Made by a program: the position numbers and the translations under genes. From Intoshia linei (lineage: Eukaryota > Animalia > Orthonectida): a DNA stretch of 56,007 nucleotides. Position 1 is the first letter of the stretch. Each line of letters starts with the position of its first letter. The DNA lies in contig LWCA01000093.1 in assembly GCA_001642005.1 (NCBI GenBank), positions 1 through 56,007 on the forward strand, in the 5' to 3' direction. Under the pieces are notes generated by a model. It made no database searches, had not been told where the DNA came from, and worked only from the letters and a program-made list of their open reading frames with translations. This document shows, one piece after another, positions 4,849 to 41,100 of this stretch.

Positions 4849-5149
4849 ATGGAAAGCCAAGAAAGAATAGAGTGGTTTGCTAAAAGGGCCCAACTGTCCT
4901 TAAGTTTATCAGTTGACCAAAAAAAGATGTTACTACACGATACTCATTATAGACAAATCATTAACAATTTTTTTACAATTCCAGATAAAACATTACTACG
5001 TGTTTCAATAAAAAATAAATTGAGTAATCTACAAAATCATTGGAATGATGAAATTTACTTGTCAAATAACATTCCAACTAGAATTGATGGGAAAACGTTG
5101 TTTTTAATAAAAACTAATGATTTAGCAAATGCTAATTTGGACAATATTG
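4849..5149 (+). CDS. Dynein HC-like exon 1 (ATG)
   Basis: ORF MESQERIEWF...; donor G|gtaata at 5150; phase 1 fits exon 2. Confidence 0.75.
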
Positions 5150-20100: not shown

Positions 20101-23100
20101 GTGTACAATTATATCTTGTATTGAGAGGTCTGAATGTATTTTTTTATCTCGTTTTTCCCAAAACATTTTACCGTGGATCGATAACTTTCATTACATTACA
20201 TTTATAGTGAATTATAAATATTGTCGCATTTCAAAAGGGAGACAATTTTTAAAGTTCAGTTCAAATTAATATTTGACTCATTTCGCGTCTCTCTCTTACC
20301 TCCTACTACCCTTCATATCTCCCTCTCACCATTTCTGTGGTCGTATATATAATCCTTACATATATACTATGCTACGCAATATTTTTTGTGTGTGTTCCAC
20401 TTTATTTCAGTAACTACCATTCTTAAAATTATATAAACGCTACATTTCTATTACAGTTTTTTCCTGGGTGATAATAAGATAAATTTCAACCTCCCAAACT
20501 CACATCGTATTTGGCAAAAACCCCAATTGTCTTTTTTTTGAAAATCAAACGAGTTGGAGAATTTAAAAAAATACATACGCTGATACGAATTTTAAAATTA
20601 TAAACATTATCATAAATTTAAATTTAAAAAACTTATATCTTCAGACCCAAAACCCCAAATTACCCTTTTTTTTATTATGAAAACAGCCCTAACTTTACAA
20701 AATGTACAGGTGGTACAGTTGTATCCTGTTAACACACACAAAAAATTTGAATCCAAATAAGTGACAACTTCACGGTCAAAAAAGCATTTTAATATTCATA
20801 TATTTTTTTCCGAAGTATTTTATTAAAACAAAAAATGTGAAATAATTAATGGTCCGAAAATTAAAAAAATAAAAGTTATTCTGATAGCTTATTCCAGTTG
20901 ATATAAATACAAAATTTGAATCCCACAAATACAACTTTGTTATTATGATTTTTATATTTATGACTAGCTTGACTGTTATTACTTTATTTTATTTAATTAT
21001 GAATTTTGATATTCAAAACTTGTTTCCTTTGAGGTAACTTAAAAAAGCTTTTATAAAAAAATACTAGAAATTACTGTCCTGGTTTTTATATGAATTTAAT
21101 CATTTTGTAGACAAATAAAATTCTCATGAATTATGAAATTTAAAAATTGTAAAACACCTTAATGTACATACTTTAAACAATGTAGATATTTATACTATAC
21201 TTATAAATTTATTTCGTAGAATACAACATTATCGTATCAATTAAAAAACACTAAAAAATTGTTTCTTAAATTAAACAAACACCACAGGGAATTGGCAAAA
21301 CTTTTTAAATCAACACTGTCTGGATCATTTGCTGATCAAATATATACATGGAAAAATAATCTAAAAATTATTGAGGAAATTTTACACATATGGTTAAAAT
21401 TCGCCGAAAGATTTAGAAAAATAAATCAAATTATGAAGAATAACGAAATTTACGAAACTTTAAAGAAAAAATGTACTCAATTCTGTTACATAAATAATGA
21501 ATATAACGGATTTATGCAACATGTTTATGAATTTCCGAATATTATGAAAATATGTTTTAAAAAAAGTAAATTACTTTCGTAACGTATAAATGTTATGTAA
21601 TTAACCTGTTAACTGGTTGTTTAGTTTAATTTTATCCATTAAAAATTTGATTATAATAATTATATATTACAGTTATATTTCAAGATTTGTGCTGTTTTAT
21701 ATTTAAATTATTATAATTTATAAAAACGCGTGTTAGAAATATAAATTTAAGTTTATTTTCGTATTTTTATTAATTTGTTTTTACAAAAACTTAAATTCCT
21801 GCTTCGTTTGTTAAATCAGTTCATAGGTTAATATTCACAAAATATAATTATACATATTATATATAAACATACTAACTGAATCACTAATGAGTATTATGTT
21901 CATTGAAAATTATTCAACATGGTTAAACACATTTTTATTCAGTAGTGCATAAATTACTTTTACTTACTTTTATAAAAATTATTGATTATGGCATAATCGA
22001 TAGTGATTTTCAAATGGGGACTTGGCCTAACCAGGGGGACCTACAGAGTCTGATAGGTCACAGATTTAACCTTTAAGAGATCTTTTACCATATTCTACTG
22101 TACTAATTATTGAAGTCTATCAACTTAATTTATTAAAATTAAGAGTTAACTGATATAATCATATCAATTAACAATAATAAAATAACTGTATTCCACATAA
22201 ACCTTTACGAGACAATTGCATGATTATGTTAAATAAATGTGAACTGAAATTTTTACAATGTATGATTATAAGGGTGTCACATCAAATATTTTTTTTAAGA
22301 AATATAAAAACATACCTGTAGATTAGATTTAATTTAAAAATAGACCATTAACGAATGTGCGTTCATCAATTAAATAATTTACAAAAATAGCTAAATTTAA
22401 GTTTATTTTCATGTTTTTCTGAATTTTGTTTGACAAAAACTGAAATTTCTGCTTTGTTTGTGGAGGAAAATTAAAAATGTTTTGTATATTTTAATAAAAC
22501 GTGTTGAGCAGCATCATTTACAATTCACTTTATTCTATAATACAAAAAAACATTTGTTTTTTAATTATAATAAATATGATGATTTTGTTTTGCCGTTTAA
22601 ACAATGTTTGTGAAATAAATAAATGTAAACACTTTTTCGAACTTTTTGAAAATGTTAATCTAATTTTAGAAGAGACCTTAAGATAGTCATAATGCAACCA
22701 AAATTTTATGTATTTTTAATATACCAATAAAATAAATGATTTTGTAAATATTAACCTACAATATATCATTATAAACAATTATAATCGATAATAATTACAT
22801 AATTATTATTCAAAGTATTTTGTTAAAATTTATTTAAATCTGTGACTATATTTTAAATGTCTTCCTCTATTGTGAACAAATTTAATGCTCGTTTATATTT
22901 TTTTAAGTAAAATGACGTGTAAAATAGGACATAATGTTAATGCGTATTAATATTATTTATTAATCCGCATAAATTGTCGTATTTAAACATACTCCACAGT
23001 AAATTTCATTATGTTAATTGATTAAACTAAATAAATTATAAATTTTTATTATTAAATTAAGGTCTCTTATAAAAGTAGAGTAAACTTTTCGAAGCGACAA

Positions 23101-26100
23101 AAAAATTTATACGTTTAACCAACTACAAACAACAAAAAAAATGATAAATATAGCTGTAATATGAAAAATTTTTTTTTATATTATAAAAATTATTATATTA
23201 TTAATAACGTCAATGGTAGTTGATGCAGCTTAACATTATTTATTAAAATGTACAATTATTTTCAAATTTTTTACACAAACGAAGCACGAATTCAAGTTTT
23301 TGTAAAAATTCAGAAAAGCATGAAAATAAACTTAAATACAGTCAGACTTGTTGATAGTGAACTTAACTGATTATATAGAAAATAAACTTAGATTCATAAT
23401 TAATAATGTTTATGATTTGTTATTTTCATTGTTCATTATTTTTTATAGTGAACATTAAAAAAATTCGGAACCAAATGTTCACTATACACAATTCTGACTG
23501 CATATTGATTTATTTGAAAATAAATTTAGCTATTTTTTATAGAACTGCTCCGTGTAGCAATTTTCTGGCAATTCTGGAAATTATATAATTACGTTTCATG
23601 AATTAAGTATTTTTTATTGCTTATTCTCAGCTAAATATTAAAGCCAAATTTAATTTTTTCACTATTAATTAATGATAATGAAATTTGAAAGTTATGAAAC
23701 AGCTTTAAAAGTTAGCATTTCAAATGTGAAATTTTTTGCTTTTAATTTCTAAATCAGCATAATCTCGTAAGGGTTAAATCTATGCCATTTAATTATATCC
23801 TTTTAATGGGTCCCGTATTGGTTTAAAGCGTTCATGTTCATTAGTTTAATTTAATAAGTAGAAAATAAATGTGAACTATTCTTGTTTGATATTTAAATTA
23901 GATTTAAAAAGATTTTTCTTTCATCTTGGTGATAAGCTTAAAATGTGTGAAATTGCCATAGAGAAAATGTTAATTGCAAAGCGATCTGAATTTCCAAGGT
24001 TGTATTTTGTATCAAATACAACTTTGATTAATGTATTTAGTGGAGGTAAAATTAATAATGCCTAATATAGAGTACTAGCTTGGCTGTTTTGTACTACGTA
24101 AAAACAGCACCTAGTTCTGCCGAGGGCGGACTTATCTAAATCTACTTAAAAAATAAATTCAATAATAAAATCTTACTTAAAAATACTACTCATTAATAAT
24201 CATTTAAAGAAGTCATTCCTTAACTTGACGCGAACTTTTTTGAAGTCTAAAATTAAATGACAATTTTTATTAATTTATTTGAGTTTTAGAAAAAAAATTT
24301 ACAAAATGTTGTTTTTTCCCTAAAATTTTATGTTAGTAAAAATTGAGTTATAGGAATGTGACTACCTAGTATATAATTATATTATAGGTCTTGATGTCGA
24401 AATCATGAATAGATACATTTATCTTTTATTTCCAAATATAAAATATTTGGACTATCAATTAATTCAAAATGATACCAAGATTGCCTCAAATGTAAATGGC
24501 GTCTTAACAGCCCTTTTCCAAATAAACTCAATTTACATGCAAAATGGTGATATACTTGAATTGGGTATACCTGTTATATGCAATATTAATGTGGATTCAT
24601 GGTTATCACAATTGGAATGTTCTGTAACGTTGGCTCTAAAAACTCAATTAATATTTGTCCTCAATTTTGACGACAACCCGGTGAAATCTATAATATGTGG
24701 TGATGATCTTAATGATAACAATCAATGTTCCATTAAATCGAACGAGGAAGAAGCACATTCAATTTTATATCCATACTCTGTTTTGTACAATAACATTATT
24801 AGGAATCGAAAAAGTATTAATTCTTTATTAGAAAACGAATCCTTAGTTAATGGTAATTACTACACTAATAAATAATAATAATTAACACACCATGTCATTA
24901 AGTCATAACTAATGATATTTCTACAATCAAAATGAAATTAAGTTTATTATATAGAACATTTAATTATTTATTTGGACATTTGAATCGATTGATTGATTCG
25001 AAAAGATTTACAAAGATTGACACTAAGAAATTTTCACCATTTTGTTTCATTTGTCTAATATTTTTAGGTAAGCCAAAATGTTTAATCGACTTGCCAATCT
25101 TTAAAATATTGACAAAACCTGTCTTTTATGAAACAAGCCGAATGTAAATTTGAATTGACTATAAAATTAAATCCGAAAATATATGACACTAATAATTATT
25201 TTCAATCTTCTCATGCATATTAAAAATATAACAAAAGATTGTCAAAATTAATTGGCAAACTTTAATTATTTACTAAACCAACTATGGCTTGTCATTCTTT
25301 CTTTGACAGCCTAATTTAAGACAATAATAAAAAATTTGGTGAATTATATTGCCATATATTTACTAAATTTATGATAATACAGTGATATTTCGTTCTTATG
25401 ATGTTCGATTACTTAAATTTTAGTTTATTTAGAAACAATTTTAAGCCAAAAATATTTTTTGCAATCATAGATATGTAATTTTGGCTTTACATTTATCTTT
25501 AAATAAACTAAAATTGAAGTAATAAAACAAAGAGATCGAGATATCACTGTATAACATAACATATTTAATAAAATGAAATTTTTTTTCGAAGATATGTATG
25601 TAGCTAAAATTTTTGTGATGAACATATTTTACTTTTAAATTTTTCAAATCGCAATCAAATGATGAATGATTATAAAATCATAGTAACTAGCATATTTTAA
25701 TAAATCGCAATTAATTCAACTTAATATACGATAAATGAATATTAAATAAATTAAAGGTACCCAATAATTAACTCAACAGTGTCTCTTCAACAGGTCGAAG
25801 ATCTCAATCCGGTTGTAGTAGACATTTAAAGGGTATTTCAACTATCTAAATCCAGATCTACTGAAAAACTTTGATTCGAATTTTTGAGTTATTGAGATTA
25901 CAAGAAAAATATGTAATACATTTTTTTTTGAATATTTAATTTCAATTTTACTATAAAATTTTAATCAGATTGTAATACAATTAAAATTACGATTATAGTA
26001 CGATATTATTACGATACAATTACGATATTAACTAGCTTGACTGTTATGTACTACGTACAAACAGCACCTAGCTCTGCCGAGGGCAAATTTTTATTATACC

Positions 26101-29100
26101 AAAAAAATAAATTGATGTTCAAAATCTAACTTAAAAATCCTACTATTCACAGTTATCAATCCTTTAAAGGAGTGGTTCCCAAACTTGTTTCAAATGGAAC
26201 CATCATATAACATTACTTTAAAGTGAATTATTCCATCTTAATTTTTAGTTTGTTAACATTTGCGTATAGAATTTTAGAAACAATTGATATCCCATTTTTT
26301 TAATCTATTAGACAGAATGTGTCTATAATATTAAAAATAAAGTAAAAACAATCCAATCCTAATAATTGTCATAAATAGCATAAATGCCAGAAAAAATATA
26401 ATTATAAAAACCTTTTGTCATTTTCAATGTGATGATATATATTCAGTACCAATTTAATTAATACTGAAAAATACCAATTATGTATCAATTATGTATTTGA
26501 ACAATGATTTTAAAACTTTTAGTTTATATTTTAATTTAAAATCGAGTTAGAGAATTGGCGAGTTCTAGAGAGAATACTGTATAATTTAATTATAATGACA
26601 TTTTTATTGACTTGTCAAAATCTGACATGTTTACAATCAAGTATATTCTTGATGTTATTTGAAAATTTATAACTATTTTTGAGGTTGTCTAGTTTGATAA
26701 AAAGGCTAATATACATGTTGTTGTAAGATTTCTAAACTGAACACACAATTCTCAATATGATGTAGAATTATAATATAGTACATTGCGTTTAGATGATCGA
26801 AATTTATCCCAAATTGAATCACCTATGAATGATCACGTAGAAATTAAAGAAAATAATGAATCATTAAAGGAATATTTAATTGAAAATATAGGTGTGGAAA
26901 GATACAACTATTTCGATACAGATACATTTCTATCAATTCTAAATGCTACCGGGCAGATTTTGAATTTATTTTTAAAAATTAAATTGACTAAACTCATTGA
27001 TATTCATTTTGTTAATTCTTTTAACATTGAAAATGAAGAAGATAAAAATCAAATAGAAAAACCAAATATACCGCAATACAACGCTTTGAATTACACAGAT
27101 CACCTTATTTTAGTTATCTCCATGATGATAAACTATAACAAACAAAGTAATTTAATATTTAACTACGTTTAAATATGTATTAGGTTGACTGTTATGTACT
27201 ACGTACAAACAGGACCTAGCTCTGCTGAGCGCACATTTTTTTATACTTGAAAATAAATTCACGTAGAAAATCTAATTTAAAAATCCTACTATTCACTATT
27301 ATTAATCCTTTCAAGTAGTGGTTACCAAATTTGTGTCAGGTGGAACCATCATATCACATTACTTTTTACTTTAAAGTGAATTATTCCACTTAATTTTTTG
27401 TTTGTTAACATTTATAAATAAAATAAAAAAACAGTCCAATCCTAAAAATTGTCATAAATAACACAAATTTCAGAATAAATTAAATTATAAAAACCTATTT
27501 TGTCATTTTCAATGTGATAATATATATTCAGTACCAATTTAATAAATACTTAAAATTACAAATTATGTATCAATAATTAACCGAATCTCCACATTATTTT
27601 AGTCGAATTTTCCAAATTTCCAAAGGATTGTAATAAATATAAACATGATATTAACAAAGTTGTTTTAGTTGCGTTGTTTAGTTTCTATTTAAATTTTATT
27701 CAAAATGTTTTGAAAATGATAATTTGAAATTTAAAAATTGTGCAGCTTTGAATAAAATTCCGAAAAAATGAATTATATAGATTTTCACCCATATTTCTTT
27801 ATTGGAAATTTGTAGACGTTCACTGTTGTTTAAAATAGTAGTAAGTATATAGTAGTGGTAAGTGGTAAGTGGATATAGTAGTAAATAATAGTAGGATCAA
27901 TATTTACATTTTCAATTTTTATTTTAATCGAAATATTTGAAAAATATTGATTGATAGTATATTAAAAATTATTTTTTATCAGAATGCGTAGATTTCTCTG
28001 GTTTAACTTTTGTATTTGTATCAACGGTTAATTATTTCACATTTTTTGTTTTAATAAAATATTTCGGAAAAAAATATATGAATACTAAAATGATTTTTTG
28101 ACCTAAGTCGTGACTTATTCGGATTGAAATTTTTAATTTTGGAATAATTCGGTGTGTTAACAGGATACAACTGTACTACATGTAAATTGTTTGAAATTCT
28201 GATATTTAAAATAATCAACCCGACTCAAATCTTATCATTAAATATTTTTATTGAGAAATATTATTAATATTACATAAATGCATAGGATGCGTGCAGTACG
28301 TCATTAAAATTATCACTTTTTTGAAAAAATGTGAAACTCTACTGGAAGCGTCTGGTACGGTTTATAAAAAGTGCAAAACCTTCAATTTATTATATTAAAT
28401 ATATATTTTATTCAGTTTTTTGTAATTTAATTTTTTGTAATTTAAGATTCAAATAACTACTCTACACCTACATTATTATACAAATTGATGAACAGTTTGA
28501 GTTTATTATTGTATTACAAAGAAATTGCTTCCAATGGTACAAAAGCAGTTGATACAATAAGTGATGAATATTTTAAATGGCAGAGCTCACTAAAATATTA
28601 TCACAACGTGAATACAATAAACATTAGAGTAAATTTAAAATTGAATAATATTTTATGGTGTAAATAGGTGATGACATTTACGTTTACCTATCAGTTTGAA
28701 TTAGTTGATTCTAAAAATGACATCCTATCATCTAGTCATTCCAACAAGTTTGTTTGGTTCATAATACATGCAATTCAATCTTATCAGCCTTTGCAAATTG
28801 GCATGAAACAGGTATAATCAGAATAGTAATAATTAATGATACGCAATGTATTTAAATTAGATGCAATTATTAAAACAGTTGAGTTACGCATTCGGAGTAT
28901 TGATGAAAGTGGTATACCTTGACGAAACCACTACTCAAGAAAGGATTAGGAATCTTCTTAAAGGATTATGTTCAACAGGTATTGAATAGTGATGGAAACT
29001 AGATCACATGTGGTATACTAATTTTTTGAGTATATTCGAAAATTATTTTCTAGTGAGTTTTCTAATAAAAAAATTGTTATGAGCTCTTGGAAATGTAACG

Positions 29101-32100
29101 ATAGTGAAATTCTTTCCTACATCACAGTGCTTTGAGTAATATATTTTAGCAAAGTTTCAATAAAATTTATAATGTTCACTGAACATACCAAGTAGATTTC
29201 AATGTAATTTAAGTGAAAATTTTTTACTCATTGTATCTATTAAATTTAAATAAATGATGTTTCATTTTTCTCCTGTATGATCAATTTATGTAAAATTAAA
29301 AAAAGTCTAGTCTGTATTTTTACACCAGAACACTGCTTTGCCTTCACTGATATATAACATTTTATTATATGCTTATTGATTATTTTAAATATATGATGTA
29401 TTCCATTAGTAATAATAATTTACTTAAAATGTAGGTGCATGGATAGCATTTAATAATATGGATGAATTAGATACATTGTTGCTATGTAAGCTAGTTAAAA
29501 ATATCGAAATGATATGTTCGTTATTGAAATCAAATGATTCCGAAGAAAATCACGTTTATGAAAATATTCATCTGAAAAAAAATCTATTTCCGATATGTAT
29601 CAAAAACACATGGAAAAAAGATTGTATCCAGAAAAAGTATTCTTGGCAAAAGAAACAAATAGAAAATTTCTTTAGGCCCATAGATTTGATTCAATTTGAT
29701 TTCAGTCATAGACTAAAATTATATTTAAATATTAAGTGTAATTAATATGCTTTATTTGTTTACAGTAGAATTTCGAAATTTTTGTAGAATTTTCTTGATG
29801 CGTAGCACTCAATGCATTCAGAATATAATAATAATATAATATAATCATCAAATTCAAATATTGATAATGCAGAAACCATTTTAATTATTCCATCGCTAAT
29901 ATTATAGAAAATTGTAAATGTAACTTTATTTGTGTAAATATTAATGCGTTTTTATATTTGTGACGCTTTCCTTGTATGTTTAATTTATTCAATACATGCT
30001 AGCTTTTTTATTTTGAGTTTCATATTGGCAATATATTATGCGTCATAATGGACCCTGATACCAAAAAAAAACTGAAAAGTGAGCAAAGGATAAATTCAAA
30101 TAATTAAAATATTTAACTAAATATGGGTGTAACAATTGTTAAGAATGAAAGATACTTGAAGAGTTAACAAAATTAATGTTAATGTTTAATTTACAAATTT
30201 GGTTATTTCCAAATATTCAATTGATACAATTAAGTTCTTCTTTATCCAATACATCATCGTGCAGTTACCACGATGATGTAACAATTGGTATGACCATAAA
30301 AAAAGTAAAGACCATAAATAAATAAATAATCACAGTACCATACAATACAATTCACTTTAATTCTTTGTATGTGATAATTAAAATGGTTCCTATATGGTCA
30401 ATATTGAATTTTATGGGTTTTTATTTTGTAGTAATATTGATATCGTGCAACTGAATAGATTAAGTACTAGACACTCTTGTTTTTCAGATACATGTTACAC
30501 CCTTGTACAGTAGAGTGTCACATTTTTTGAAAAATGTTTAAATTTGAAAGACGGAGTAACTAGATGGGATGTATTTTTAAAAAAAATAACAATTCGATGA
30601 GTACCTCAGAGATTGGTCCAGTAACGATGTTGCGTTGCTCAATTAACTAATTAAGAAAAAATAGCTAAATTCAACTTTATTTTTATGTTCTTTTTAATTT
30701 TTTCATACAAAAACGTAAATTCCTGCTTCGTTTGCGGAGAAAAATTAAAAAAAATTGTATATTTAAATATATCGTGTTCAGCTACATAATTTACAATTGA
30801 CTTTATTCTATAATATTAAAAAAATAATTTTGAAAATTATAGTTATTATTATTTTATTTTGGTGTTTAAAGTATATTTTACGGTGTAAATAAATTAAGAC
30901 ACTTTTTGTAACGTTTTATAAATTTTACTCTAATGATAGAAGAGACATTAAGGTAGTAATAATAAAATAATGATTTATATCCTCACTAGACTAATAAAAT
31001 AATAAAATTTATTTAAAGCAGTCTCTATATTATGAATTTCTTTTTCTTTGATGGACAATTTTAATGCTTTTTTATATTTTTGTAACGCTCTTTCGGCGGC
31101 ATCGTTTACAATTTGTGATATACCTATACTTGTTAAATATTTATTTTCGTAAAGTTTAATGTTATCGTATTTTTTTTTGCTGCTTCAACAAATGATTTTC
31201 ATAATATGATGTCTACAAGGTAGTTCTGTTATTTCTTGGTGGAAATGACGTTTAATAAATTGTACAGATCCATTATAGATGCCTGTATTGCTAGTCGTTG
31301 TATCAAAACAAATATCAACAATTTTGCTTTCGATTTTTCAATGTCTTAAAATTTTTAACAATCCGACTTAATATTTTGTAATACCTTTAGCATCCGATTG
31401 CAGTAGAACTCCTAATATAACCTCAAATTTATTAATTATATCAATAATTACAACAGCCATTCACCACCATCAAATTTATTTCCATCGAAATATACAACGA
31501 CGTTGTTTATTTTATGTACTTTATTTATAATATTTTCTTTGATGGCTTAACTTTCTACTCATAGCTTCGTGAGATACCCGCATTAAAGAAAAAGATCCAC
31601 GTAAAAATATTTTTCTTCTGTCGCACTCTCTCAATTTATCCATTTCAACACTGATAATTTCATCATTTAAATTAATTGATTCATCACTAAATGTATAGAT
31701 GTAATCATCTTTTGAATATTTTCCATTTTGATCATTTCTCTTTATTTTATTTTTCGATATTGATTTTTTTTGGGGGAAGGTTATATGGATGTGAAATAGT
31801 AGAAGGGCCTGTCATACTACCGACAAATTTTTTTTAAGCTTCTAAGAATTCTATGTCTTCCTTCAAGCTTTTAGATTGATCAAGTTTAGAACAATCAAAC
31901 AAATCATTTTCAAGATGATATAAAAATATCTTAGCTCGAAGTCAGTGAGGATTCCTGGATACCTAAATTTAATTAATTAAATTAAATCAAAATTTTACTT
32001 TTCTATATTCGACGTAAAATATATGGAGTCTTTTGTTAATTGCACATTCAGAAATGATATTTAATCCTGTTTTTTTATATAATATTGTATAAATAAAAAT

Positions 32101-35100
32101 TTATAAAATTATTTATTTAATTCGTCTATTGACAATATATAAAATTTTTGTTGCATTATTACTATCTTAATGATTCTTATATAATCAAAGTAAAATTTTC
32201 GAAACGTTACAAAAAGTGTCTAAATTTATTTACCTCATAAAATATTGTTTAAAAAACAAAACAAAATTATAATAACTATTATTTTCAATTTTTTTTATTA
32301 TTATAGAATAAAGTGAATTGTATATGATTTAGCTTACCACGATATATTAAAATATACATCTTTTTAAATTTTTCTCCGCAAACGAAGCAGGAATTTAAGT
32401 TTTTGGATGAAAAAATTAAGAAAAACATGAAAATAAAGTTGAATTTAGCTATTTTTTGTTAATTAGTTAATTAAGCAACGCAACGTCGTTACTGAATTTT
32501 TTGAAAAACTGTTTCTAACATCGTGATCTGCATTCAAAAATACACTCACTACTACTCCGTCTTTCAAATTCTGAAAATTTAAAAACAATATTAAACCCTA
32601 TTGTACAGTGCCGAACCTACCGTACCACTAGATTTTTCTTCAGGAGGCTTAGACGAAATTTTTGTTAAATGGGGGCATCATTTTTCCAAATTAAGAATAA
32701 AATTATATTCTTGAATACCGTACTTATTTTGTCTGTTAAATATAAAATGTAAATTCGAAAGCTTTAGAGAGGTAACTAGTAGCAATGTAGTAAAAAAACA
32801 TTTTAAGTGGTATATTTTTAAGCGGTATATTTTTAAGTGGGATATTTTTCATTGAATATTCTCCATATGGGTAGGTTCAGCTTTGCCACATTGTACGATA
32901 TAAACTCTACCAATTTTTAGATTCTTAATTTGATATATTAATTTGTGAAAACATAAAACTGAATTATCGTTACTTATATAATATGCTACTCAATATTTGT
33001 TTTTGTGTATGTGTATTACCGTTTCTTTCAATTACTACTTACTTGTTTGTTATTGTTACTTACAATTACTATCAGTCTTAAAATTTTATTAAGTCTACTA
33101 ACACCCCGGAAAAAACTTTATAAATTTAAATGAAATCAAAATGTATCTTTGAGACTGGTAGTTATTGAAATAAACGATAACACACACAGACAAATAAAGC
33201 ATATTATATAAGTAAAGATTTAATCTATTAAACTTTTATGAATATTTATATGAAGTAGATTTATATAAATATAACAGAAGTTGTATTGTTTAGCGTAATT
33301 ATTTAATTTATCTGTATAGGTTTTAGAGAAGTTTCCATAATAGTGGATTGGTTTATTGATGTATATAATTGGTTAAAACTATACCCATTACATCTTAGTG
33401 AATGTGCAATGGAAACAGAGAAATGTAATTAAATTATATACTGTACTAGGTTGACTGTTATGTACTACGTAGAAACAACACCTAGCTCTGCTGAGGGCAC
33501 ATTTTTATTATACCAAAAAAATAAATTCACGCTAAAAATCTAACTTAAAAATGCTACTATTCACTATTATCAATCCTTTAAAGGAGTGGTTCCCAAACTT
33601 GTTTCAGGTGGAACCATCATATCACATTATTTTACTTTAAGTTGAATTATTCCATCTTAATTTTTTGTGTTAACATTTGCGTAAAGAATTTTAAAAACAA
33701 TTGCTATCCCATTTTTTTAATTCAGTAGACAGAATCCTAACTTATATAATATGCTATGCAATTTTTGTTTGTGTGTGTTCTATTTTATTGAAATAACTAC
33801 CAGTCTTAGAATTTTTTAAAGACCACATTTTAATTACAGTTTTTTCCGGGACGTATAATAAGATACATTTCAACCTTCCAATTTCACATTGTACGGGTCA
33901 AAAACCCAGTTGTTCCTCTTTTTGAAAATCAAACGAGTTGGAGAATTTAAAAACATATATACGCTGATACGGATTTTAAAATAATAAACATTACCATAAA
34001 TTTAAATTTAAAAAAATTATATCTTCAAGGCCAAAACCCCAAATTATCATTCTTTTTTAAATGAAAACAGCCCTAGAATTTCAAACAATTTACAGGTTGT
34101 ACAGTTGTATCCTGTTAACACACACAGAAACTTTTAATCGAATAAGTGACGACTTCACGGTCAAAAAAACATTTTAGTATTCATATATTTTTTTTCGAAA
34201 TATTTTATAAAAACAAAAAATGTGAAATAATTAACGTTCCAAAAATGAAAAAAAAAATTATTTTTTAATGAAATATTTTATTAAAACAAAAAATGTGCCC
34301 TCGGCAGAGCTAGGTGCTATTTGTACGTAGTACATAACAGTCAACCTAGTTATAATATAAAATAAGAAACATGTATCTTGATGTATTCTCATTTCAGATT
34401 TAACAAAATTGTCACAAGATTTTGAATTCATAACATTGTCACAAACAATCATTGATTTGGCTGATATGATGCTAGTACAGTCTAAAAAATATAATGGTAT
34501 TTTTGGAAACACTAAATTACACTAAGTTAAAGTGGCCAGAAAAAATACCTACTATCAATTTTAATTAATTTGGTGATAAATTAAGTGATAGTACGTATTT
34601 TTCTGACCACTTTAACTAAGTAACAAAGTTTTTTCGGTTTCGTTGTTGTAGTTTCTTATTCAAGTTTCAATGTTTTAATAAAAATGTTTTGAAAATGAAA
34701 ATTTGAAATTTAAAAATTACGTAGCAATGCAAAAATTTCCGAAGGAATGAATTATATAGATTTTCACTCATATTTATTTAGTGAATATGTGTAGACGTCC
34801 AATGTTAATTTTTTTTGAAATTGTAGGATCAATATTTACATTTTCAATTTTTGTTTTAAACCAAATATTTGAAAAATGTTGGTTTATAATATATTTAAAA
34901 TTATTTTTGGCCGGGAATACGTAGATTTTTGGGGTTGAAATTTTGTATTTATATCAACTGGAATAAGCTTATTAAAAAAATAAGTCCTATATATTTATAA
35001 TACAGCTTTTCCAGAATGATGCAGTATCAAAAATTTAATTCTTAGAATTTATAATCTGCAGCGTCAAATACATCAATTTCAAATTAAAATAATTAAGTCC

Positions 35101-38100
35101 GACAATTTAAAAAAATAGCTTAGTTAATACTTTATTTTCCAGTTAATATATAGAAAAATTTTCAATACGAAAAAATATATTAAGAGTAGCTAGCTCTGCC
35201 AAAGGCGAACTTATCTAATTTTAATAATATATTTAATAATATAAAGCACATTCTTGATTAAACGAAAAAAAATACTAAACCATCTATAGCGTTAATAGAT
35301 ATTAGTTTTTTTATGTTAATATTAATGTATTGTAATTAATTAATATAATGTGTTTATCATATAATAGTGATGTATCATGTGATACATCGGCTTTGAAAAA
35401 GTTATTTTCTTTTTACTTTCCAGTATAAGATATTTCAAATATGAGACTTATTATTAATATATATTTTAGAGAATGTTCTAATTGATAACATCGAGATTAG
35501 GTTTATATATACCTCTTTCAAATATATTATAATGCCTCGCCTTGGGGAAGAATATTTTAATCATATGAACACTCAATTGATAAAAAATTTGAAATTTGAT
35601 ACGACAACAAATTTGATAGAGCAATTATTTTTGGAATTTATGTCTCAATTAAAACTTCCACTTGAAAATGAAAACATTAATAGTCCAATTAATCCTATGT
35701 GCATCAACAATAATGTCAATCGTTTACATTATAATGAAAGCTGTGTGAAAGTTGAAACAATTTTAGATCAAAATGAGAAGATCATGTTAAAAATTTACAA
35801 AAATGAAATTAATGAAAAAATTCAAAAATTATCGCTTTATAAAAATTTATTCCAAAATGTAAGTTATTCATTTTATACAACTACTAGTTGACTGTTATGT
35901 ACTACCTAAAAACAGCATCTAGCTCTGAACAGAGCACATTTTTATTCTACCAAAAAAATAATTTTAATCATTTAATTAATTAATTAATCTTATAATAAAT
36001 TCTTTTAGTATTACAGGTAAACGTATCCGTAGTCCTTACTTATATAATATGCTGCGCAATTTTTGTTTGTGTGTGTGTGTTCCACTTTATTGAAATAATT
36101 ACTAGTCTTAGAAGTTTATAAAGTCCACATTTCAACTACTGTTTTTTCCGGGACGTATAATAAGATAAATTTCAACTACCCAAACTCACATCTTACGGGT
36201 CAAAAACCCAAATTATCCCTCTTTTTGAAAATTAAACGAGTATGATTTTAAAATCCGTATCAGCTTATATATTTGTTTAATTTATTAAAATTTGATTTTT
36301 CAAATGTTAAAATCCAACATTATTAATCTAACATTTTTAATCTAACATTTGAAAAAAATTTCCAAGGAATGAATTATATAGATTTTCACCCATATGTTTT
36401 TATTAAAAATGTGTAGAAGTACAATGCACATTTTTTTTTGAAATTGTAGGATCAATATTTACATTTTCAATTTTTGAATTTAATCGAAATATTGGAAAAA
36501 TATTGGATGATAATATATTAAAAATTATTTTTCACCAGGAATGCGTAGATTTCTCGGATTGCAATTTTGTGTTTATATCAACTGGAATAAGCTGTATCAG
36601 AATAATCTCTTTTTTAACTGTAGGACTGTTAATTATTTCAAATTTTTTATTTTAATAAAATAGTTTCGAAATAATAAAATTAATACTAAAGTGCTTTTTG
36701 ACCGTGAAGGCGTCAATTTCTCAGATTGAAATTTTTTTTGTGTGTCAAAATGATGCAACTATACAATAAAGTGTTAACGTTATGATGGAATTTCAGAAAT
36801 TAAAAAAATACAGGGCCGTACGGTATGAAAAATGCTAGTTCACTCTTTTGATTAATGTTTAAATTCGAAAACAAATTTTAATATTAATTTAATTAATTAA
36901 TTAATAATTAAATTTTAAAATTTTATAATTTGGAAAATTATCATAAATTGATTAATTATAATTACAACTCAAATATCTCAATAATTACGTGATAAAATTT
37001 ATTAAAATAAATTAAAATATATTAAAACAGGGGTATTTTTTGGTGAGATCGTTTTTTGAGTGTTGTTCAGTGTTATAAACTGAAATGGTGATACCCCTAA
37101 CTAAGCCAATTAGTTCATTTTTTTCGTTTAGTGTCTTAATCATATTTGATAACATATCTATTTCAAATTGGGAAACTATAACTAGGTAGGACGAATATGT
37201 GGTTTCGAAATATATTAAGATATTCCATCTAAATATTTTACATTTATCCATAATTGGTAATTTTTTTAAAATGAATACTTAGATAATAATTGTTGGACCG
37301 ACCCTATCAGGAAAGTCTACAAGTATTGAAATATGGAAATGGTATGAATTGACAAACAACGTAAATTTTGGAATAGAGAAGGTATATTTGCATTCTATAC
37401 ATGATAAAGAATTAAAAAACAAAATTTTAAATAATGAACTTGAAAAATTAATTGAAATTTGTTTTAATGAAGGCTTCTCAAAACACCAAGTTTTACATAT
37501 AGATGGATTTGTAGACTCAAATTTAACGTGTTTAATTGATAACTTCAATATACCAAAATATTCCATAGATAAAAACTTGATTAATGTACTACTCGAAACT
37601 GATCAATTACATAATATTGATCCTGGATTTTTATCAAAGTGCGGTATAATATTTTATAAAAAAAATGAGTTTGATCGATCATTAAATGAACTGAAATTGG
37701 AAATTTGTGAAATGTTTACCGACGAATCAAAAACTATCAAAGTTCTACATGCCTTAATTGATGGATTGGTGACTGATTTTGTTATATACATTGACGAAGT
37801 TATATTTTCGCAAAGAAACACAGAAGATAACATATCAAACATAACATCGAATTTAAGCGTTATTGTTAAAACTGCTATTGTTATATTTAAAAACATCTAC
37901 ACATCGCGACATAGAAAAGAAAATAATAAAGATGAATTGCTATTTATTTTATCGTTTATTTGGTCCATTACATGTATTCTGGAATCTAAAGAACTAGATA
38001 TTATGATTTTATGGATTAACAAATATGTTGTAAATAGATATCCACAGCTTGAGAACAAAAGTGTTTACGAGTATGTAGAAATTATATTTAGTAAAAAGTG

Positions 38101-41100
38101 GAGTAATTCATTAAAATCTCAGAATTATTCGGTTGATGATAGTGGCGATGTATTTGTTAATACGAGTTTAACATTGTGGGTTTTTTTTTTAATGGACATT
38201 TTTGAGGATTCTAAGTATTCAACGTTCATTTCGGGTAATCCTTTATCGGGTAAATCAAAAATTTTACAAAATAGAATGAAAATTTCATTTATGGATAATT
38301 TTTCAAAAAATAATGCATTTTATGTTCAATCCAATAGATATTTAACGTGTGGCTTTTTGCAAAAAAAAATAAATGATTACATTTATTGGCAGTATTCTAA
38401 CATTTACATGCCTAATGTAAATTCTGTATTGGTTTGCTTTATTGATGATATTTATATGGCAAAAAATCCGAATAATGACACATTGGTTGAATTTATACGG
38501 TCACATTTGGATAACCAAACATATTATGATATTGAACGAAAACGACGCATAATTGTTGATAATGTTAATTATGTCGTAAGTTCTTCGCAAACACATAATG
38601 ATGTTAAGTGTAGTTATAATCCTCGATTCTTAAGGCACTTTTGTCATATTCGTTTGCCAGATATTAATGAAGATATGATATTTTCAATTCTACGCGGTAT
38701 AACCGAATTTAATTTTGATAAAAATGTGGAACGATCCGAAGATTTTGGAAACTTAAATTTAGAATTAAATGAATGCGTTAACTTCCTTATAAAAGCATCG
38801 ATTAATTTAAGCTATAAATTAAAATCACTATATTTGATTGATTGGAGAAGATTAACTTATAATTTCACTATCGTCCCACTTGTGGTTATATTTAAAAATT
38901 TGTGCCTATCATCGGATCGTAATACGACGTGTTTATCGTTATGCGAGAAATGGAGAAATGAAGTAGATTGGACATTTGGATACAGTTTAATTAGTGAAAT
39001 TGATACTAATCTATTCAATGAAGCACGTAATAAATGTATAAAAAGCTTATTTTCTGATGAAAATATCATACGAGTATTAACTACAACCGATTTTAAATTA
39101 TATAGCAATTTGTTACACTTAAAGAAGGAATTAAAAACTAACATCAAAAATACAATAAATAGTGAAAAAACTCTGGATAATTATGTTAAAATCAAAAATA
39201 TTGACGAATTGATTAATTTTATATATGAAAATATACAAGAATACAATAAAATTAAATTGAATATTGACATCACTTTGTTTGAACCTTACGTCCATATAAT
39301 ATCTCGTATTTGTAGGATTCTCAATTCTCCGTGGTCACTGGGGCATTTATGGATTTGTGCAATTGGATCAATAGGTAAAACTGTAAATATAATACGTTTA
39401 TCATCATATATTGTTGGATTTGATATAAGCCATTATTCCAATCCGATGGATTCAATCAAGGATGATGATATATTTAAACATTTTAAGTCATTTATTTTTA
39501 AAAATCTCGTTGTATCGGGCGTAAATAATCAACCGCTCGTTTTATTAATAGATGACGAGAAAATAAATATATATGAACCATGCATACATTATATATCTCA
39601 AATTTTATCGAACATATCTTCATTTGAGAGTATTTTGAACGTTGATGACATCACAAACATCATTAACTCAATACGAACTGAATTATCTCAAATCGGAATA
39701 TCATATGATCACGAAAGTGCCTGGAATTTTTTCATAAAAAATGTAAAAAAGAATTTGAGAATTATAATCCTATCTAATAATTATGAAAAAGCGATACACA
39801 ACGGAAAAAATGAATGCACAAGCATTTTAACTAAACTACAACTAATATACTTGAGAAACTGGAATAAAAAAGAACTGATTGACGGTTGTTATCATTATAT
39901 GGAAAGTAAAATAACATTTTCGAGTGCGAGTGTAAAGAAAAACTTGGCACACGTATTAACAAACATGCATTTATCCATCCGAGAACAAGATGAACGAAAC
40001 TGCAATAAAACATTAAACAACATTACATTTGAAAGATTAATTAAACTATTTGTAAATACAATAAATAAGAGATTCCAACTAATATCGAAAGAACATAATG
40101 ATGCTTTGAAAATGGTAAAAATTTATGACGAAAGAAATAAAAGGTTGATTCTAATGAAGTCTCAATTAAATCACGATGAGATTATTCTAAAACAAAAGAC
40201 TAAAAGTTGCAACCTTATATTAGTTCAACTGGGTCAAGACAATGTCATTTTAAGTCGGTACAAACAAATATATCTTGTTCAATCTAGTAAAATCTATAAA
40301 TTAAAATCAATTCTACCCAAATATCAAATGAAACATGAACGTGCTGTTTATAAAATTGTTGCAATTGCATCCGATACTAAAGCGCTTGTTAAGAAACTAC
40401 AAATCGAATCGCTTTTAGAAATTAGAGCTGCTCAAAAACCATCCTATCATGTTGAAACGCTTTTAGCAGCTATTATAATGTGTAATTTATCGTATTATAT
40501 ATTCACAATGTTAATCTAATATATCTATATATTATATTAATTTATGCGGTTAAAAGAGCTGTAGCTGTAAATCATCGAGCAGAAAAAGCACTATTTATCT
40601 TTTATTTTATATTTTAATTTAGTAAAAGGATCAAACTCAAACATAACATGGCAAAAAGGAGCAAAGAGATTAATGTCGAACTTGGAAAGATTTATTGAAG
40701 ATTTAATATCTTTTGACAATAACAAAATATTACTTTCGAGTTATAAAGAAGTTATAAAATTTGTTGGATTAAAACAGGATGCATTTAAAATATTTGAGTT
40801 AACAGACGAAGATTCAGTCGATACAATTTTTATTTTATATAAGTGGTTAATGGGAGTGTTAAGATATTACGATATAATGTTCAACACAATTAAACCTTTG
40901 TTTGATAAAATAAATTACACAACAGAAAAAATTGAAAATATCAAAAAAAAACAAGCTATTTTGGAAGTTAAACAAATGGAACTGAAAAATAGAAAAAATT
41001 TAATGAAACATTCCTTTGAACAAGCTACAATTGATAAAATTGAACAAATTAAAGCTTATAATTTGGTAAAGGAGTCTTTGAATTCTGATCTAAAAAAAAA

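What the first reader, a model, noticed from the sequence alone, without database searches (positions are those of the whole stretch)
28668..34496. Full-length dynein heavy chain whose primary ATPase site (AAA1) is dismantled: a candidate pseudo-motor
Seen: the spliced AAA1 reads YQFE..IHAIQSYQPLQIGMKQ|MQLLKQLSYAFG..KGLCSTGAWIAFNNMDEL. Known: active dyneins have near-invariant GPAGTGKTET (Walker A), GAWGCFDEFNR (Walker B), FITMNPGYAGR (sensor I) and HYDFGLR (sensor II). Here Walker A is absent and shortened, Walker B DE is NN, no TMNP motif is present, and the sensor II region reads DFEFITLSQ. The ~16.4-kb CDS nevertheless has no stop or frameshift in a window where every transposon ORF is decayed. 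Inference: a selected, ATPase-dead dynein acting as an axonemal scaffold, brake or regulator. DNHD1 is a known precedent for degenerate dynein-like proteins, but I cannot say whether this is an orthologue or a separate family.
Basis: partly seen in the sequence, partly recalled or inferred. Interest (0 to 1): 0.85.

Follow-up and report, generated by a model that had tools for sequence, protein, structure and literature searches.

The report
Ancient ATPase-dead outer-arm-type dynein gene
This is a real, transcribed gene of the tiny parasite Intoshia linei for a giant dynein whose main ATP-burning site is destroyed. The defect is not new to this animal: it is shared by an old, little-studied animal dynein family (most likely "class-13"), so this is a new member of a known kind.

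Summary
A 10.3-kb spliced transcript contig uses exactly the proposed AAA1 junctions. AAA1 reads QPLQIGMKQM at the Walker A position, FNN instead of FDE at Walker B, and has no sensor-II arginine. No alternative exon in the window could restore these motifs.

The gene is public as OAF70976.1, a hypothetical protein of Intoshia linei (5,095 aa). That model probably lacks about 375 N-terminal residues.

It is not DNHD1. It belongs to a well-separated clade of 5.1-6.6-kaa heavy chains derived from the outer-arm beta chain. The clade runs from corals to amphibians and none of the members retrieved is from a mammal. All 48 members examined lack the Walker A Ser/Thr and the Walker B Asp-Glu, so the dead site is ancestral.

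Longer AAA5, a low-complexity C-terminal extension and a beta-type tail match Kollmar's class-13 (2016). The 2025 "DNAHX" non-motile dynein looks like a different, analogous family.

Conservation is inverted: stalk, microtubule-binding domain and tail are best kept, and AAA1 is among the worst. This fits a non-motor scaffold or regulator.

The scan noted another AAA1-dead dynein elsewhere in this genome (s1-784651, filed as DNAHX). I found two such extra genes.

The parts
4849..5166 (+). Putative first coding exon (ATG, N-terminus of the tail). It is not in the public model.
   Evidence: ORF of 105 aa on the gene's strand. The public model starts at about residue 378 of family members and about residue 407 of outer-arm beta chains, so upstream exons are needed. 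Not confirmed by RNA.
6970..11535 (+). Span holding three further putative tail exons (about 6970-7263, 8511-8657 and 11470-11535).
   Evidence: Weak but collinear tblastn matches of residues 190-381 of five family members (Lineus, Owenia, Haliotis, gar, salamander). Inferred only.
14232..17969 (+). Large tail exon (DHC_N1 and the start of DHC_N2). It is the first exon of public model OAF70976.1.
   Evidence: Pfam DHC_N1 E=2.9e-36 and DHC_N2 E=1.8e-15. Exact match to P0001 residues 1-1246. Best solved relatives are outer-arm beta, DNAH9 and DNAH17 tails.
19737..27145 (+). Five linker exons (19737-19988, 21220-21564, 23904-24047, 24390-24851, 26792-27145).
   Evidence: Exact matches to P0001 residues 1248-1767. 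DHC_N2 matches at 21220-21576 and 23901-24089. Boundaries are good to about 2 nt and were not checked with RNA.
28449..28628 (+). Exon at the end of the linker.
   Evidence: P0001 residues 1769-1829. The donor at 28628 and a 39-nt GT..AG intron are seen in contigs of X1 and X2.
28668..28811 (+). AAA1 exon a. It ends in QPLQIGMKQ, which lies at the Walker A position.
   Evidence: Spliced contig, DNA, alignment.
28861..28978 (+). AAA1 exon b (MQLLKQLSYAFG...CSTG).
   Evidence: Spliced contig, DNA.
29435..29737 (+). AAA1 exon c. It holds the Walker B position (GAWIAFNNMDE), the sensor-I region (ICIKNTW) and a conserved FFRP.
   Evidence: Spliced contig, alignments.
33320..33424 (+). AAA1 exon d (small-domain helices).
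   Evidence: Spliced contig, both joints GT..AG.
34398..34496 (+). AAA1 exon e. The sensor-II position reads QDFEFITLS, with no Arg.
   Evidence: Acceptor at 34398 in X1 and X2 contigs, alignment. The 3' end comes from P0001 only.
35469..35858 (+). Exon between AAA1 and AAA2.
   Evidence: Exact match to P0001 residues 2085-2214.
37283..40480 (+). Exon covering AAA2, AAA3, AAA4 and stalk coiled-coil 1. P-loops GPTLSGKS (from 37295) and GNPLSGKS (from 38234). AAA4 reads AIGSIGKT.
   Evidence: Pfam AAA_7 E=1.3e-16 and AAA_8 E=1.4e-21. P-loop scan. Exhaustive HMMER search.
40625..43006 (+). Exon covering the microtubule-binding domain, coiled-coil 2, the rest of AAA4-small with the family's insert, and AAA5.
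   Evidence: Pfam MT and AAA_9. AlphaFold2 model (mean pLDDT 57.5) matches dynein motor structures.
41297..41641 (+). Family-specific insert after coiled-coil 2: beta-hairpin (41297-41344), disordered Ser/Asn-rich linker, alpha-helix (41597-41641).
   Evidence: Strands at exon residues 225-230 and 234-240, helix at 325-339. The motif IDH-IDSVYGRKLNW aligns with the family's IDS-IDPxKGRVIDW, and canonical chains have nothing here.
43682..46744 (+). Last exon: AAA6, the C-terminal domain, a 163-aa Asn/Ser/Lys-rich extension (46253-46741) and the stop codon.
   Evidence: Exact match to P0001 residues 4076-5095. Weak Dynein_C match. The extension is present in all complete family members and absent from canonical chains.

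Best explanation
The window holds the Intoshia linei orthologue of an old animal family of dynein heavy chains that arose by duplication of the outer-arm beta chain. The family is most likely Kollmar's class-13.

Shown: the gene is intact and transcribed. It encodes about 5,100-5,470 residues with all dynein domains. AAA1 lacks the Walker A Gly-Lys-Ser/Thr, the Walker B Asp-Glu (here Asn-Asn) and the sensor-II arginine, so it cannot hydrolyse ATP; that it probably cannot bind it either is my inference. This loss is ancestral to the family, not an Intoshia novelty. AAA2 and AAA3 keep their P-loops.

The best-conserved parts are the tail, AAA3-AAA4, the stalk and the microtubule-binding domain. 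There is a family-specific beta-hairpin-plus-helix insert in AAA4-small and a low-complexity C-terminal tail.

Inferred: the protein does not step. It most likely uses its beta-type tail to join intermediate and light chains and a partner heavy chain. It would use its conserved stalk and microtubule-binding domain as a static or nucleotide-modulated (AAA3) contact. In that way it would act as a structural cross-bridge, brake, or assembly and transport adaptor in motile cilia.
For: Real and expressed: spliced contigs with GT..AG joints, identical to the public model.

Dead AAA1. No rescuing exon anywhere in the window. Pfam AAA_6 finds 13 ordinary Intoshia dynein AAA1 loci plus two weak extra matches (C3117, and the midasin-like C2443), but not this gene.

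Family membership:
- An exhaustive HMMER search gives 14 relatives at E 1e-88 to 1e-43, then a gap to ordinary dyneins.
- A gar query gives members above 600 bits against 410 bits or less for DNAH11/17.
- In the tree the clade, including Intoshia, has SH-aLRT 100 on a stem of 0.87.
- Shared derived characters: FNN at Walker B, the SPxxxxH 2-residue insert before the AAA4 P-loop, GQD / ERAVYK / WQKGAKR in the stalk and microtubule-binding domain, and the hairpin insert.

Ancestral loss: 48 of 48 members lack GK[ST] and none has DE at Walker B. Of 85 canonical chains, 80 have DE.

Class-13 features: the span from the AAA4-small insert through AAA5 is 590 residues against 450, and the C-terminal extension is 163 residues against 0-3. 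The tail and motor are closest to outer-arm beta.

Inverted conservation.

Gene-specific decay: Intoshia's outer-arm beta AAA1 is 82.5% identical to a snail's.
Against: No biochemical or localisation data exist. No named class-13 sequence (CyMoBase) could be fetched, so that label rests on described features.

Intoshia's branch is very long (2.3 against a median of 0.47). Its AAA1, AAA5 and AAA6 are only 15-17% identical to other family members, so some relaxation of constraint in this lineage cannot be excluded.

Intoshia's AAA4 carries a GKT-type loop that the rest of the family lacks. Some other ATP-driven activity therefore remains possible.

RNA evidence covers only 5 of about 15-20 junctions and comes from one study.
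Confidence: 0.7

Rival explanations
1. The gene is Intoshia's copy of DNAHX itself, the non-motile heavy chain found by cryo-EM in sea-urchin sperm (Chai et al. 2025, XP_041462850). It would then be locked in a pre-powerstroke shape and serve as a template for phi-particle heterodimers.
For: - Similar taxon range and unusual length, and degenerate AAA1 motifs that vary across members.
- A beta-hairpin plus alpha-helix insert in AAA4-small, as described for DNAHX.
- The urchin member of this clade has Val where Walker A has Thr, as reported for DNAHX.
- Another agent filed a different Intoshia gene as DNAHX, which shows how easily the label fits.
Against: - The Lytechinus variegatus members of this clade are XP_041471110.1 and XP_041470146.1, not XP_041462850.
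- No other urchin protein matched the clade's AAA1-AAA3 region at E<=1e-60.
- DNAHX keeps Walker B and the canonical spacing Walker A +101 / +172 to the sensors. This clade has no Asp-Glu, has inserts in that span, and the sensor-I Ser lies at +99.
- DNAHX has stalk and microtubule-binding-domain insertions. This clade has a canonical-length, highly conserved stalk.
- DNAHX is reported closest to DNAH8. This clade is closest to outer-arm beta (1,358 against about 627 bits).
Confidence: 0.15
2. The protein is still a motor. ATP turnover would have moved to another AAA module (AAA3, or in Intoshia the GKT-bearing AAA4), so it would be an unconventional but active dynein.
For: AAA2 and AAA3 P-loops and the AAA3 Walker B-like FIDD are kept across the family. 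Intoshia's AAA4 reads AIGSIGKT. The stalk and microtubule-binding domain are the best-conserved parts.
Against: Established dynein mechanics hold that AAA1 hydrolysis is indispensable for the powerstroke in all dyneins studied (cited in the paper read). The rest of the family has also lost the AAA4 P-loop (GEGCPG). The closest studied analogue with a degenerate AAA1 showed no post-powerstroke state.
Confidence: 0.08
3. The gene is an orthologue of DNHD1 (Kollmar's class-11), the mammalian degenerate dynein needed for sperm flagella.
For: DNHD1 is also described as having a poorly conserved AAA1 without Walker B catalytic residues.
Against: None of the clade members retrieved is from a mammal, although mammalian dyneins abound in the same searches. 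Kollmar lists DNHD1 as class-11, separate from classes 12 and 13. The clade's tail and motor are outer-arm-beta-like. No DNHD1 sequence was available for a direct test.
Confidence: 0.03
4. The gene is a decaying pseudogene or an annotation artefact that merely looks open.
For: Extreme divergence and a long branch. AAA1 is undetectable by Pfam.
Against: There are 5,095 codons without a stop in a genome of about 25% G+C, where roughly 9% of random codons are stops (my estimate). Exons of 1,020-1,246 codons are open. The transcript is spliced at depth 52. Family-specific motifs are conserved in the stalk, the microtubule-binding domain and the insert.
Confidence: 0.02

Closest known systems
Class-13 dynein heavy chains (DHC13) of Kollmar 2016, Mol Biol Evol 33:3249 (PMC5100056)
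   Same: - Animal family absent from humans.
- Tail like the outer-arm beta chain (class-4).
- Longer AAA5.
- Unique low-complexity C-terminal extension that is not conserved in sequence.
All four features are met by this clade and by the Intoshia protein.
   Different: Kollmar states that the ATP hydrolysis sites were not analysed. The family-wide loss of AAA1 motifs, the AAA4-small insert and the inverted conservation pattern are therefore not in that paper. An ichthyosporean sister sequence suggests roots older than animals. No named DHC13 sequence could be compared directly.
DNAHX / dynein-X (Chai et al. 2025, bioRxiv 10.1101/2025.01.18.633724)
   Same: Over-long heavy chain with a non-catalytic AAA1, found in aquatic animals up to amphibians and absent from mammals. 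It carries a beta-hairpin plus helix insert in AAA4-small. It was shown to be non-motile and to pair with a second heavy chain. It is the best experimental analogue of how this protein probably behaves.
   Different: It appears to be a different gene in sea urchins. DNAHX is DNAH8-like, keeps Walker B and canonical AAA1 spacing, and has a disrupted stalk and microtubule-binding domain. This clade is beta-like, has lost Walker B, and has its stalk and microtubule-binding domain as its most conserved parts. My inference, untested, is that DNAHX corresponds to Kollmar's class-12.
DNHD1 (class-11; mammalian sperm-flagellum dynein-like protein)
   Same: A degenerate dynein heavy chain with a non-catalytic AAA1 that is nevertheless functionally required.
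   Different: It is a separate class in Kollmar's scheme and is present in mammals, whereas no clade member retrieved here is mammalian.
Canonical outer-arm beta heavy chains (DNAH9/11/17, Chlamydomonas beta)
   Same: The closest canonical relatives in both tail and motor. The domain order is the same.
   Different: The canonical chains keep GPAGTGKT and FDEFNR, and AAA1 is their most conserved domain (86% between snail and bird, against 17-46% in this clade). They have no AAA4-small insert and no C-terminal extension. Intoshia has its own canonical copy on contig C2808.

Membership tests
Dynein heavy chain superfamily | Tail (DHC_N1), linker (DHC_N2), six AAA modules, stalk with microtubule-binding domain, and C-terminal domain, in that order | tested here: met
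   Pfam DHC_N1, DHC_N2, AAA_7, AAA_8, MT and AAA_9 are over cut-off, and Dynein_C is weak, all in order along the + strand. The model of the MTBD-AAA5 exon matches dynein motors.
Catalytically active AAA1 (motor dyneins) | Walker A GxxxxGK[ST] | tested here: not met
   Reads QPLQIGMKQM. There is no alternative exon.
Catalytically active AAA1 (motor dyneins) | Walker B Asp-Glu | tested here: not met
   Reads FNNMDE: Asn-Asn at the Asp-Glu position, as in 20 other family members.
Catalytically active AAA1 (motor dyneins) | Sensor-I Asn and sensor-II Arg | tested here: inconclusive
   The sensor-II Arg is absent (QDFEFITL). The sensor-I region reads ICIKNTW and may keep an Asn, but the alignment is uncertain there.
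Class-13 DHC (Kollmar 2016) | Distinct motor clade whose tail resembles outer-arm beta (class-4) | tested here: met
   Clade support 100. The best solved matches of the Intoshia tail exon are beta, DNAH9 and DNAH17, with no gamma/DNAH5-type chain listed. For the urchin member, beta scores 1,358 bits against 627 for DNAH5.
Class-13 DHC (Kollmar 2016) | Longer AAA5 domain | tested here: met
   The span from the AAA4-small insert through AAA5 is 590 residues in Intoshia and 540-664 in vertebrate, echinoderm, mollusc, annelid and nemertean members, against 450 in the bird, fish, snail and bug outer-arm beta chains.
Class-13 DHC (Kollmar 2016) | Unique low-complexity C-terminal extension | tested here: met
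   163 residues (Asn 17%, Ser 13%, Lys 12%) in Intoshia and 176-723 in most other complete members, against 0-3 in all canonical chains.
Class-13 DHC (Kollmar 2016) | Groups with a named DHC13 reference sequence (e.g. Lottia gigantea, CyMoBase) | not testable with these tools
   No supplement or reference sequence is held.
DNAHX (Chai et al. 2025) | Reciprocal-best orthology with sea-urchin XP_041462850 | tested here: not met
   This is an indirect test. The L. variegatus members of the clade carry other accessions, and no further urchin protein matched at E<=1e-60. XP_041462850 itself could not be fetched.
DNAHX (Chai et al. 2025) | Beta-hairpin plus alpha-helix insert (PS2i) in AAA4-small | tested here: met
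   A hairpin, disordered linker and helix are predicted at the matching place, and the hairpin motif is conserved in the clade. Equivalence to the DNAHX insert is inferred from its position only.
DNAHX (Chai et al. 2025) | Insertions in stalk coiled-coils and in the microtubule-binding domain (pre-H3, H5) | tested here: not met
   The clade's stalk and microtubule-binding domain align with canonical chains with indels of at most 3 residues, and they are its best-conserved regions.
DNAHX (Chai et al. 2025) | AAA1 with Walker B kept and canonical motif spacing; closest canonical class DNAH8 | tested here: not met
   No Asp-Glu in 48 of 48 members. There are inserts between Walker A and sensor II. 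The closest canonical class is outer-arm beta.
DNHD1 / class-11 | Orthologues present in mammals; groups with human DNHD1 | tested here: inconclusive
   None of the clade members retrieved is mammalian. Kollmar separates class-11 from class-13. No DNHD1 sequence was available for a tree.

The most novel reading that the evidence does not exclude
Class-13 chains such as this one may be a second, outer-arm-beta-derived subunit of an ancient, entirely ATPase-dead, outer-arm-like two-headed complex. Kollmar proposed such a class-12 plus class-13 heterodimer, and 'dynein-X' still has an unidentified second head. On this reading the complex is a structural part of motile cilia in general rather than of sperm. 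That would explain why it survives in a 42-Mb parasite genome that also keeps two further AAA1-dead heavy chains, and in bdelloid rotifers that make no sperm.
Probability: 0.15. Interest if true: 0.7.

Novelty: new member of a known kind. Interest (0 to 1): 0.45.

Why it matters
The report gives a name and a family to a 5,000-residue "hypothetical protein", and shows that its public model is probably truncated at the N-terminus.

It also shows that the dead AAA1 site is a character at least as old as the split of cnidarians and bilaterians, shared by a whole family that has never been studied at the bench. In that family the stalk, microtubule-binding domain and tail are conserved more strongly than the ATPase site. 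That is the opposite of motor dyneins and a direct hint at what the protein is kept for.

An extremely reduced parasite retains this gene and, apparently, two more AAA1-degenerate heavy chains. Sperm-less bdelloid rotifers retain the family too. Both facts argue that non-motor dyneins have an important role in ordinary motile cilia, and they question the proposed link between such dyneins and external fertilisation.

Tried and rejected
1. I first filed the gene as DNAHX. I withdrew this after the cluster look-up showed other accessions for the Lytechinus members, and after the AAA1 spacing, Walker B, stalk and nearest-class features failed to match.

2. An alternative or extra exon restoring Walker A or B: none exists in any frame of the window. 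A canonical beta AAA1 gives no tblastn hit at E<=1.

3. A paralogue in the same genome: the only match besides the gene itself is the canonical outer-arm beta gene at 56 bits.

4. Contig C2443 (3,968-aa open frame with a weak AAA_6 match) has four GxxGxGKT loops and no dynein similarity. It is midasin-like and was rejected.

5. Contig C1094 (L019) is a cytoplasmic-type dynein by its stalk sequence and was rejected.

6. Rfam found nothing in the window.

7. The PDB holds no DNAHX or sea-urchin dynein entry to compare with, and the preprint gives only placeholder IDs.

8. The supplements of both key papers are not held.

Full report
**What is in the window.**
The window is the whole of a 56,007-nt contig of the orthonectid parasite Intoshia linei. 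The exhaustive protein search returned a 100% identical public protein, OAF70976.1 (A3Q56_01270, "hypothetical protein", 5,095 aa), whose only contig is 56,007 nt long. The sequence is about 25% G+C. One gene on the + strand fills roughly 4.8-46.7 kb. Its large exons carry, in order, DHC_N1, DHC_N2, AAA_7, AAA_8, MT, AAA_9 and a weak Dynein_C match. The matches are weak for a dynein, for example AAA_8 at 77 bits. In the six-frame genome scan the same module scores 80 bits here and about 339 bits in Intoshia's best-scoring dynein genes.

**Checking the observation.**
Contigs from three small public runs of one study hold the gene. Laid on 28497-34496, a 10,268-nt contig of run X1 (depth 52) skips five stretches, each bounded by GT..AG: 28629-28667, 28812-28860, 28979-29434, 29738-33319 and 33425-34397. 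Run X2 repeats three of these joints.
- The spliced AAA1 reads as quoted.
- Aligned with 45 other heavy chains, GPAGTGKT corresponds to QPLQIGMKQM, GAWGCFDEFNR to GAWIAFNNMDE, FITMNPGYAG to PICIKNTWKK, and HYDWGLRA to QDFEFITL.
- The site is substituted rather than shortened, and an Asn may survive at sensor I.
- AAA2 (GPTLSGKS) and AAA3 (GNPLSGKS) keep their P-loops.
A six-frame scan of the whole window finds only the AAA2 and AAA3 P-loops and no DE[FI]NR. A canonical beta-chain AAA1 gives no tblastn hit.

**The decay is specific to this gene.**
Pfam AAA_6 finds 13 ordinary dynein AAA1 loci in the Intoshia genome but not this gene. Intoshia's ordinary outer-arm beta gene (contig C2808) keeps GPAGTGKT and is 82.5% identical to a snail's over 349 residues. 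Its DNAH2 orthologue is 57% identical to a frog's over 1,171 residues.

**Which family it belongs to.**
HMMER against 1.84 billion representatives, using the AAA2-AAA4 exon, gives 14 relatives at E 2.7e-88 to 7.7e-43, all at 23-31% identity. Ordinary dyneins follow from 1e-31. Those with a source name come from salamander, gar, lungfish, bichir, spadefoot toad, coelacanth, jellyfish, a bdelloid rotifer, an argonaut and the ichthyosporean Chromosphaera. Full-length members are 5.2-5.9 kaa.
- A search with the gar motor region shows a sharp family boundary. Members score 608-3,528 bits. They include sturgeon, many frogs, echinoderms, molluscs, amphioxus, the annelid Owenia, the nemertean Lineus, tunicates, an acoel and rotifers, and corals in the urchin-query search. 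DNAH11 and DNAH17 follow at 410 bits or less.
- A tree of AAA1-AAA4 (46 rows, 1,404 columns, LG+C20 PMSF) puts Intoshia inside this clade. SH-aLRT is 100 and the stem length is 0.87. Chromosphaera is sister to the clade (support 100) and outer-arm beta chains are nearby.
- Intoshia's own branch is very long (2.3 against a median of 0.47). It sits with other fast-evolving lineages (rotifers, Macrostomum, the acoel), so its exact place within the clade is not reliable.
- Membership does not rest on the tree alone. Intoshia shares the clade's derived characters: Asn-Asn at Walker B, the 2-residue SPxxxxH insert before the AAA4 P-loop, the GQD, LPxYQxxHERAVYK and TWQKGAKRxMxNLERF motifs of the stalk and microtubule-binding domain, the insert after coiled-coil 2, and the C-terminal extension.

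**The dead site is ancestral.**
Among the sequences retrieved, 48 of 48 clade members with a recognisable AAA1 lack the Ser/Thr after Gly-Lys. The position holds K, R, F, L, Y, V, Q, N or I. None has Asp-Glu at Walker B. The pair is NN in 20 members, from corals through echinoderms, molluscs and annelids, and NG in 17 tetrapods and the lungfish. Of 85 canonical chains, 80 have DE. Intoshia's NN is therefore the inherited invertebrate state, and its Walker A has simply decayed further. The clade has also lost the AAA4 loop (GVGGSGKQS became GEGCPG). Intoshia is the exception, with AIGSIGKT. I cannot explain this.

**Naming the family.**
I first took it for DNAHX, the non-motile heavy chain found by cryo-EM in sea-urchin sperm. 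That does not hold.
- The Lytechinus variegatus members of this clade are XP_041471110.1 and XP_041470146.1, not XP_041462850. The S. purpuratus orthologue has 5,936 residues, not 5,272.
- No other urchin protein matches the clade's AAA1-AAA3 region at E<=1e-60.
- DNAHX keeps Walker B and the canonical +101/+172 spacing from Walker A to the sensors. It has stalk and microtubule-binding-domain insertions and is reported closest to DNAH8.
- This clade has no Walker B and has inserts inside AAA1. Its stalk is of canonical length. It is closest to outer-arm beta: 1,358 bits for Chlamydomonas beta against about 627 for DNAH5 and gamma.

Kollmar (2016) defined three extra animal classes:
- class-11 is DNHD1;
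- class-12 has an aberrant stalk and a tail like class-3;

The clade and the Intoshia protein meet all the class-13 features. The AAA5-containing span is 590 against 450 residues. The Asn/Ser/Lys-rich extension is 163 residues against 0-3. The best solved relatives of the tail are beta, DNAH9 and DNAH17. Kollmar states that the ATP sites were not analysed. I infer that DNAHX corresponds to class-12, but neither reference sequence could be fetched, so these labels rest on described features.

**Anatomy that bears on mechanism.**
In outer-arm beta chains AAA1 is the most conserved domain (86% between snail and bird). In this clade it is among the least conserved: 46% for Lineus against other invertebrates and 17% for Intoshia. 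The best-kept parts are AAA4-small with coiled-coil 1 (64% for Lineus, 38% for Intoshia), the microtubule-binding domain with coiled-coil 2 (69% and 38%), and the tail (63% and 25%).

An AlphaFold2 model of the exon 40625-43006, built on an 18-row family alignment (mean pLDDT 57.5, relevant parts 60-80), matches dynein motors. Right after coiled-coil 2 it predicts, in order:
- a beta-hairpin (IDH-IDSVYGRKLNW; the family consensus is IDS-IDPxKGRVIDW);
- a disordered linker;
- an alpha-helix.

Canonical chains have nothing at this place. [quoted passage not shown] Whether it does the same here is inference.

**Most likely working.**
Shown: the gene is intact and expressed; AAA1 is catalytically dead; the AAA2 and AAA3 P-loops, tail and stalk are conserved; the loss is ancestral.

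Inferred: the protein is a non-stepping dynein. It would assemble through its beta-type tail with intermediate and light chains and a partner heavy chain. It would use its conserved stalk and microtubule-binding domain as a static or AAA3-modulated contact. It would thus be a cross-bridge, brake, or assembly and transport adaptor of motile cilia.

Kollmar suggested a class-12 plus class-13 heterodimer at outer-arm positions. The DNAHX paper found a heterodimer whose second head is unidentified, but says that head lacks the AAA4-small insert. That speaks against this family being the second head.

**What could not be done.**
- AAA1 is split over five exons and has no single reference, so it was not folded.
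- No close relative was found for dN/dS.
- RNA evidence covers only the AAA1 junctions.

**Verdict.**
The gene is a new member of a known kind. Its extra value is the family-wide view: an ancestral pseudo-ATPase with inverted conservation, retained in a minimal parasite genome and in sperm-less rotifers.

Noticed in passing
window 4849-11535 (+): The public gene model OAF70976.1 starts at 14232 and probably lacks about 375 N-terminal residues. An ATG-started ORF at 4849-5166 and collinear weak matches at about 6970-7263, 8511-8657 and 11470-11535 look like missing tail exons.
   Followed up: partly
own genome, contig C3117 about 5875-19916 (+) (loci L031-L033): A second dynein heavy chain with a dead AAA1. 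The Walker A position reads about NGASQYV and Walker B reads VNIND, while AAA2 and AAA3 keep their P-loops. Its stalk and microtubule-binding domain are well conserved (40% identity to unnamed, possibly inner-arm-type chains). It is not a paralogue of the window gene.
   Followed up: partly
own genome, contig C1417 about 8062-13305 (-) (loci L049-L050): A third very divergent heavy chain. It has a weak DHC_N2 match, then a 978-aa exon in which AAA1 has neither Walker A nor Walker B (..IAIAQKYTYV.., ..VLLSNSENL..), followed by an AAA2 loop GPPGSGKT. Together with C3117 this may mean that Intoshia keeps all three non-canonical animal classes (11, 12, 13). One of the two is probably the gene of note s1-784651.
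   Followed up: partly
related proteins P0228 (Rotaria socialis) and P0012/P0170 (Didymodactylos carnosus): Bdelloid rotifers, which by general knowledge have no males or sperm, keep members of this family. This argues against a sperm-only role and against tying such dyneins to external fertilisation.
   Followed up: partly
related protein P0011 (Chromosphaera perkinsii, 4,745 aa): An ichthyosporean sequence is sister to the animal clade (support 100). It keeps Walker A (GGSGIGKT) and the AAA4 loop but has already lost Walker B. It lacks the C-terminal extension and the long linker of the insert. The family may therefore have begun to lose AAA1 function before animals arose.
   Followed up: partly
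window 39.2-39.3 kb (P0001 residues 2905-2914): Intoshia's AAA4 reads AIGSIGKT, a P-loop-like motif, whereas the other clade members in the alignment have no Gly-Lys there (mostly GEGCPG-type). Whether it was regained or retained is unexplained.
   Followed up: no
window 32300-32700 and 33000-34400 (introns of the AAA1 region): High-copy repeats are abundant in the transcript assemblies, with summed contig depth up to about 9,500. A 125-nt stretch (32461-32585) matches a 2,232-nt contig of depth 3,819. Rfam finds no RNA family in the window.
   Followed up: partly
window 1303-3048 (-): A reverse-transcriptase-like retroelement remnant, broken into several short ORFs.
   Followed up: no
related protein P0052 (4,262 aa, unnamed): A heavy chain outside the clade has Walker A GLEVVGKS and Walker B FDQ (Glu to Gln). 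This is a natural version of the classic mutation that binds ATP but does not hydrolyse it.
   Followed up: no
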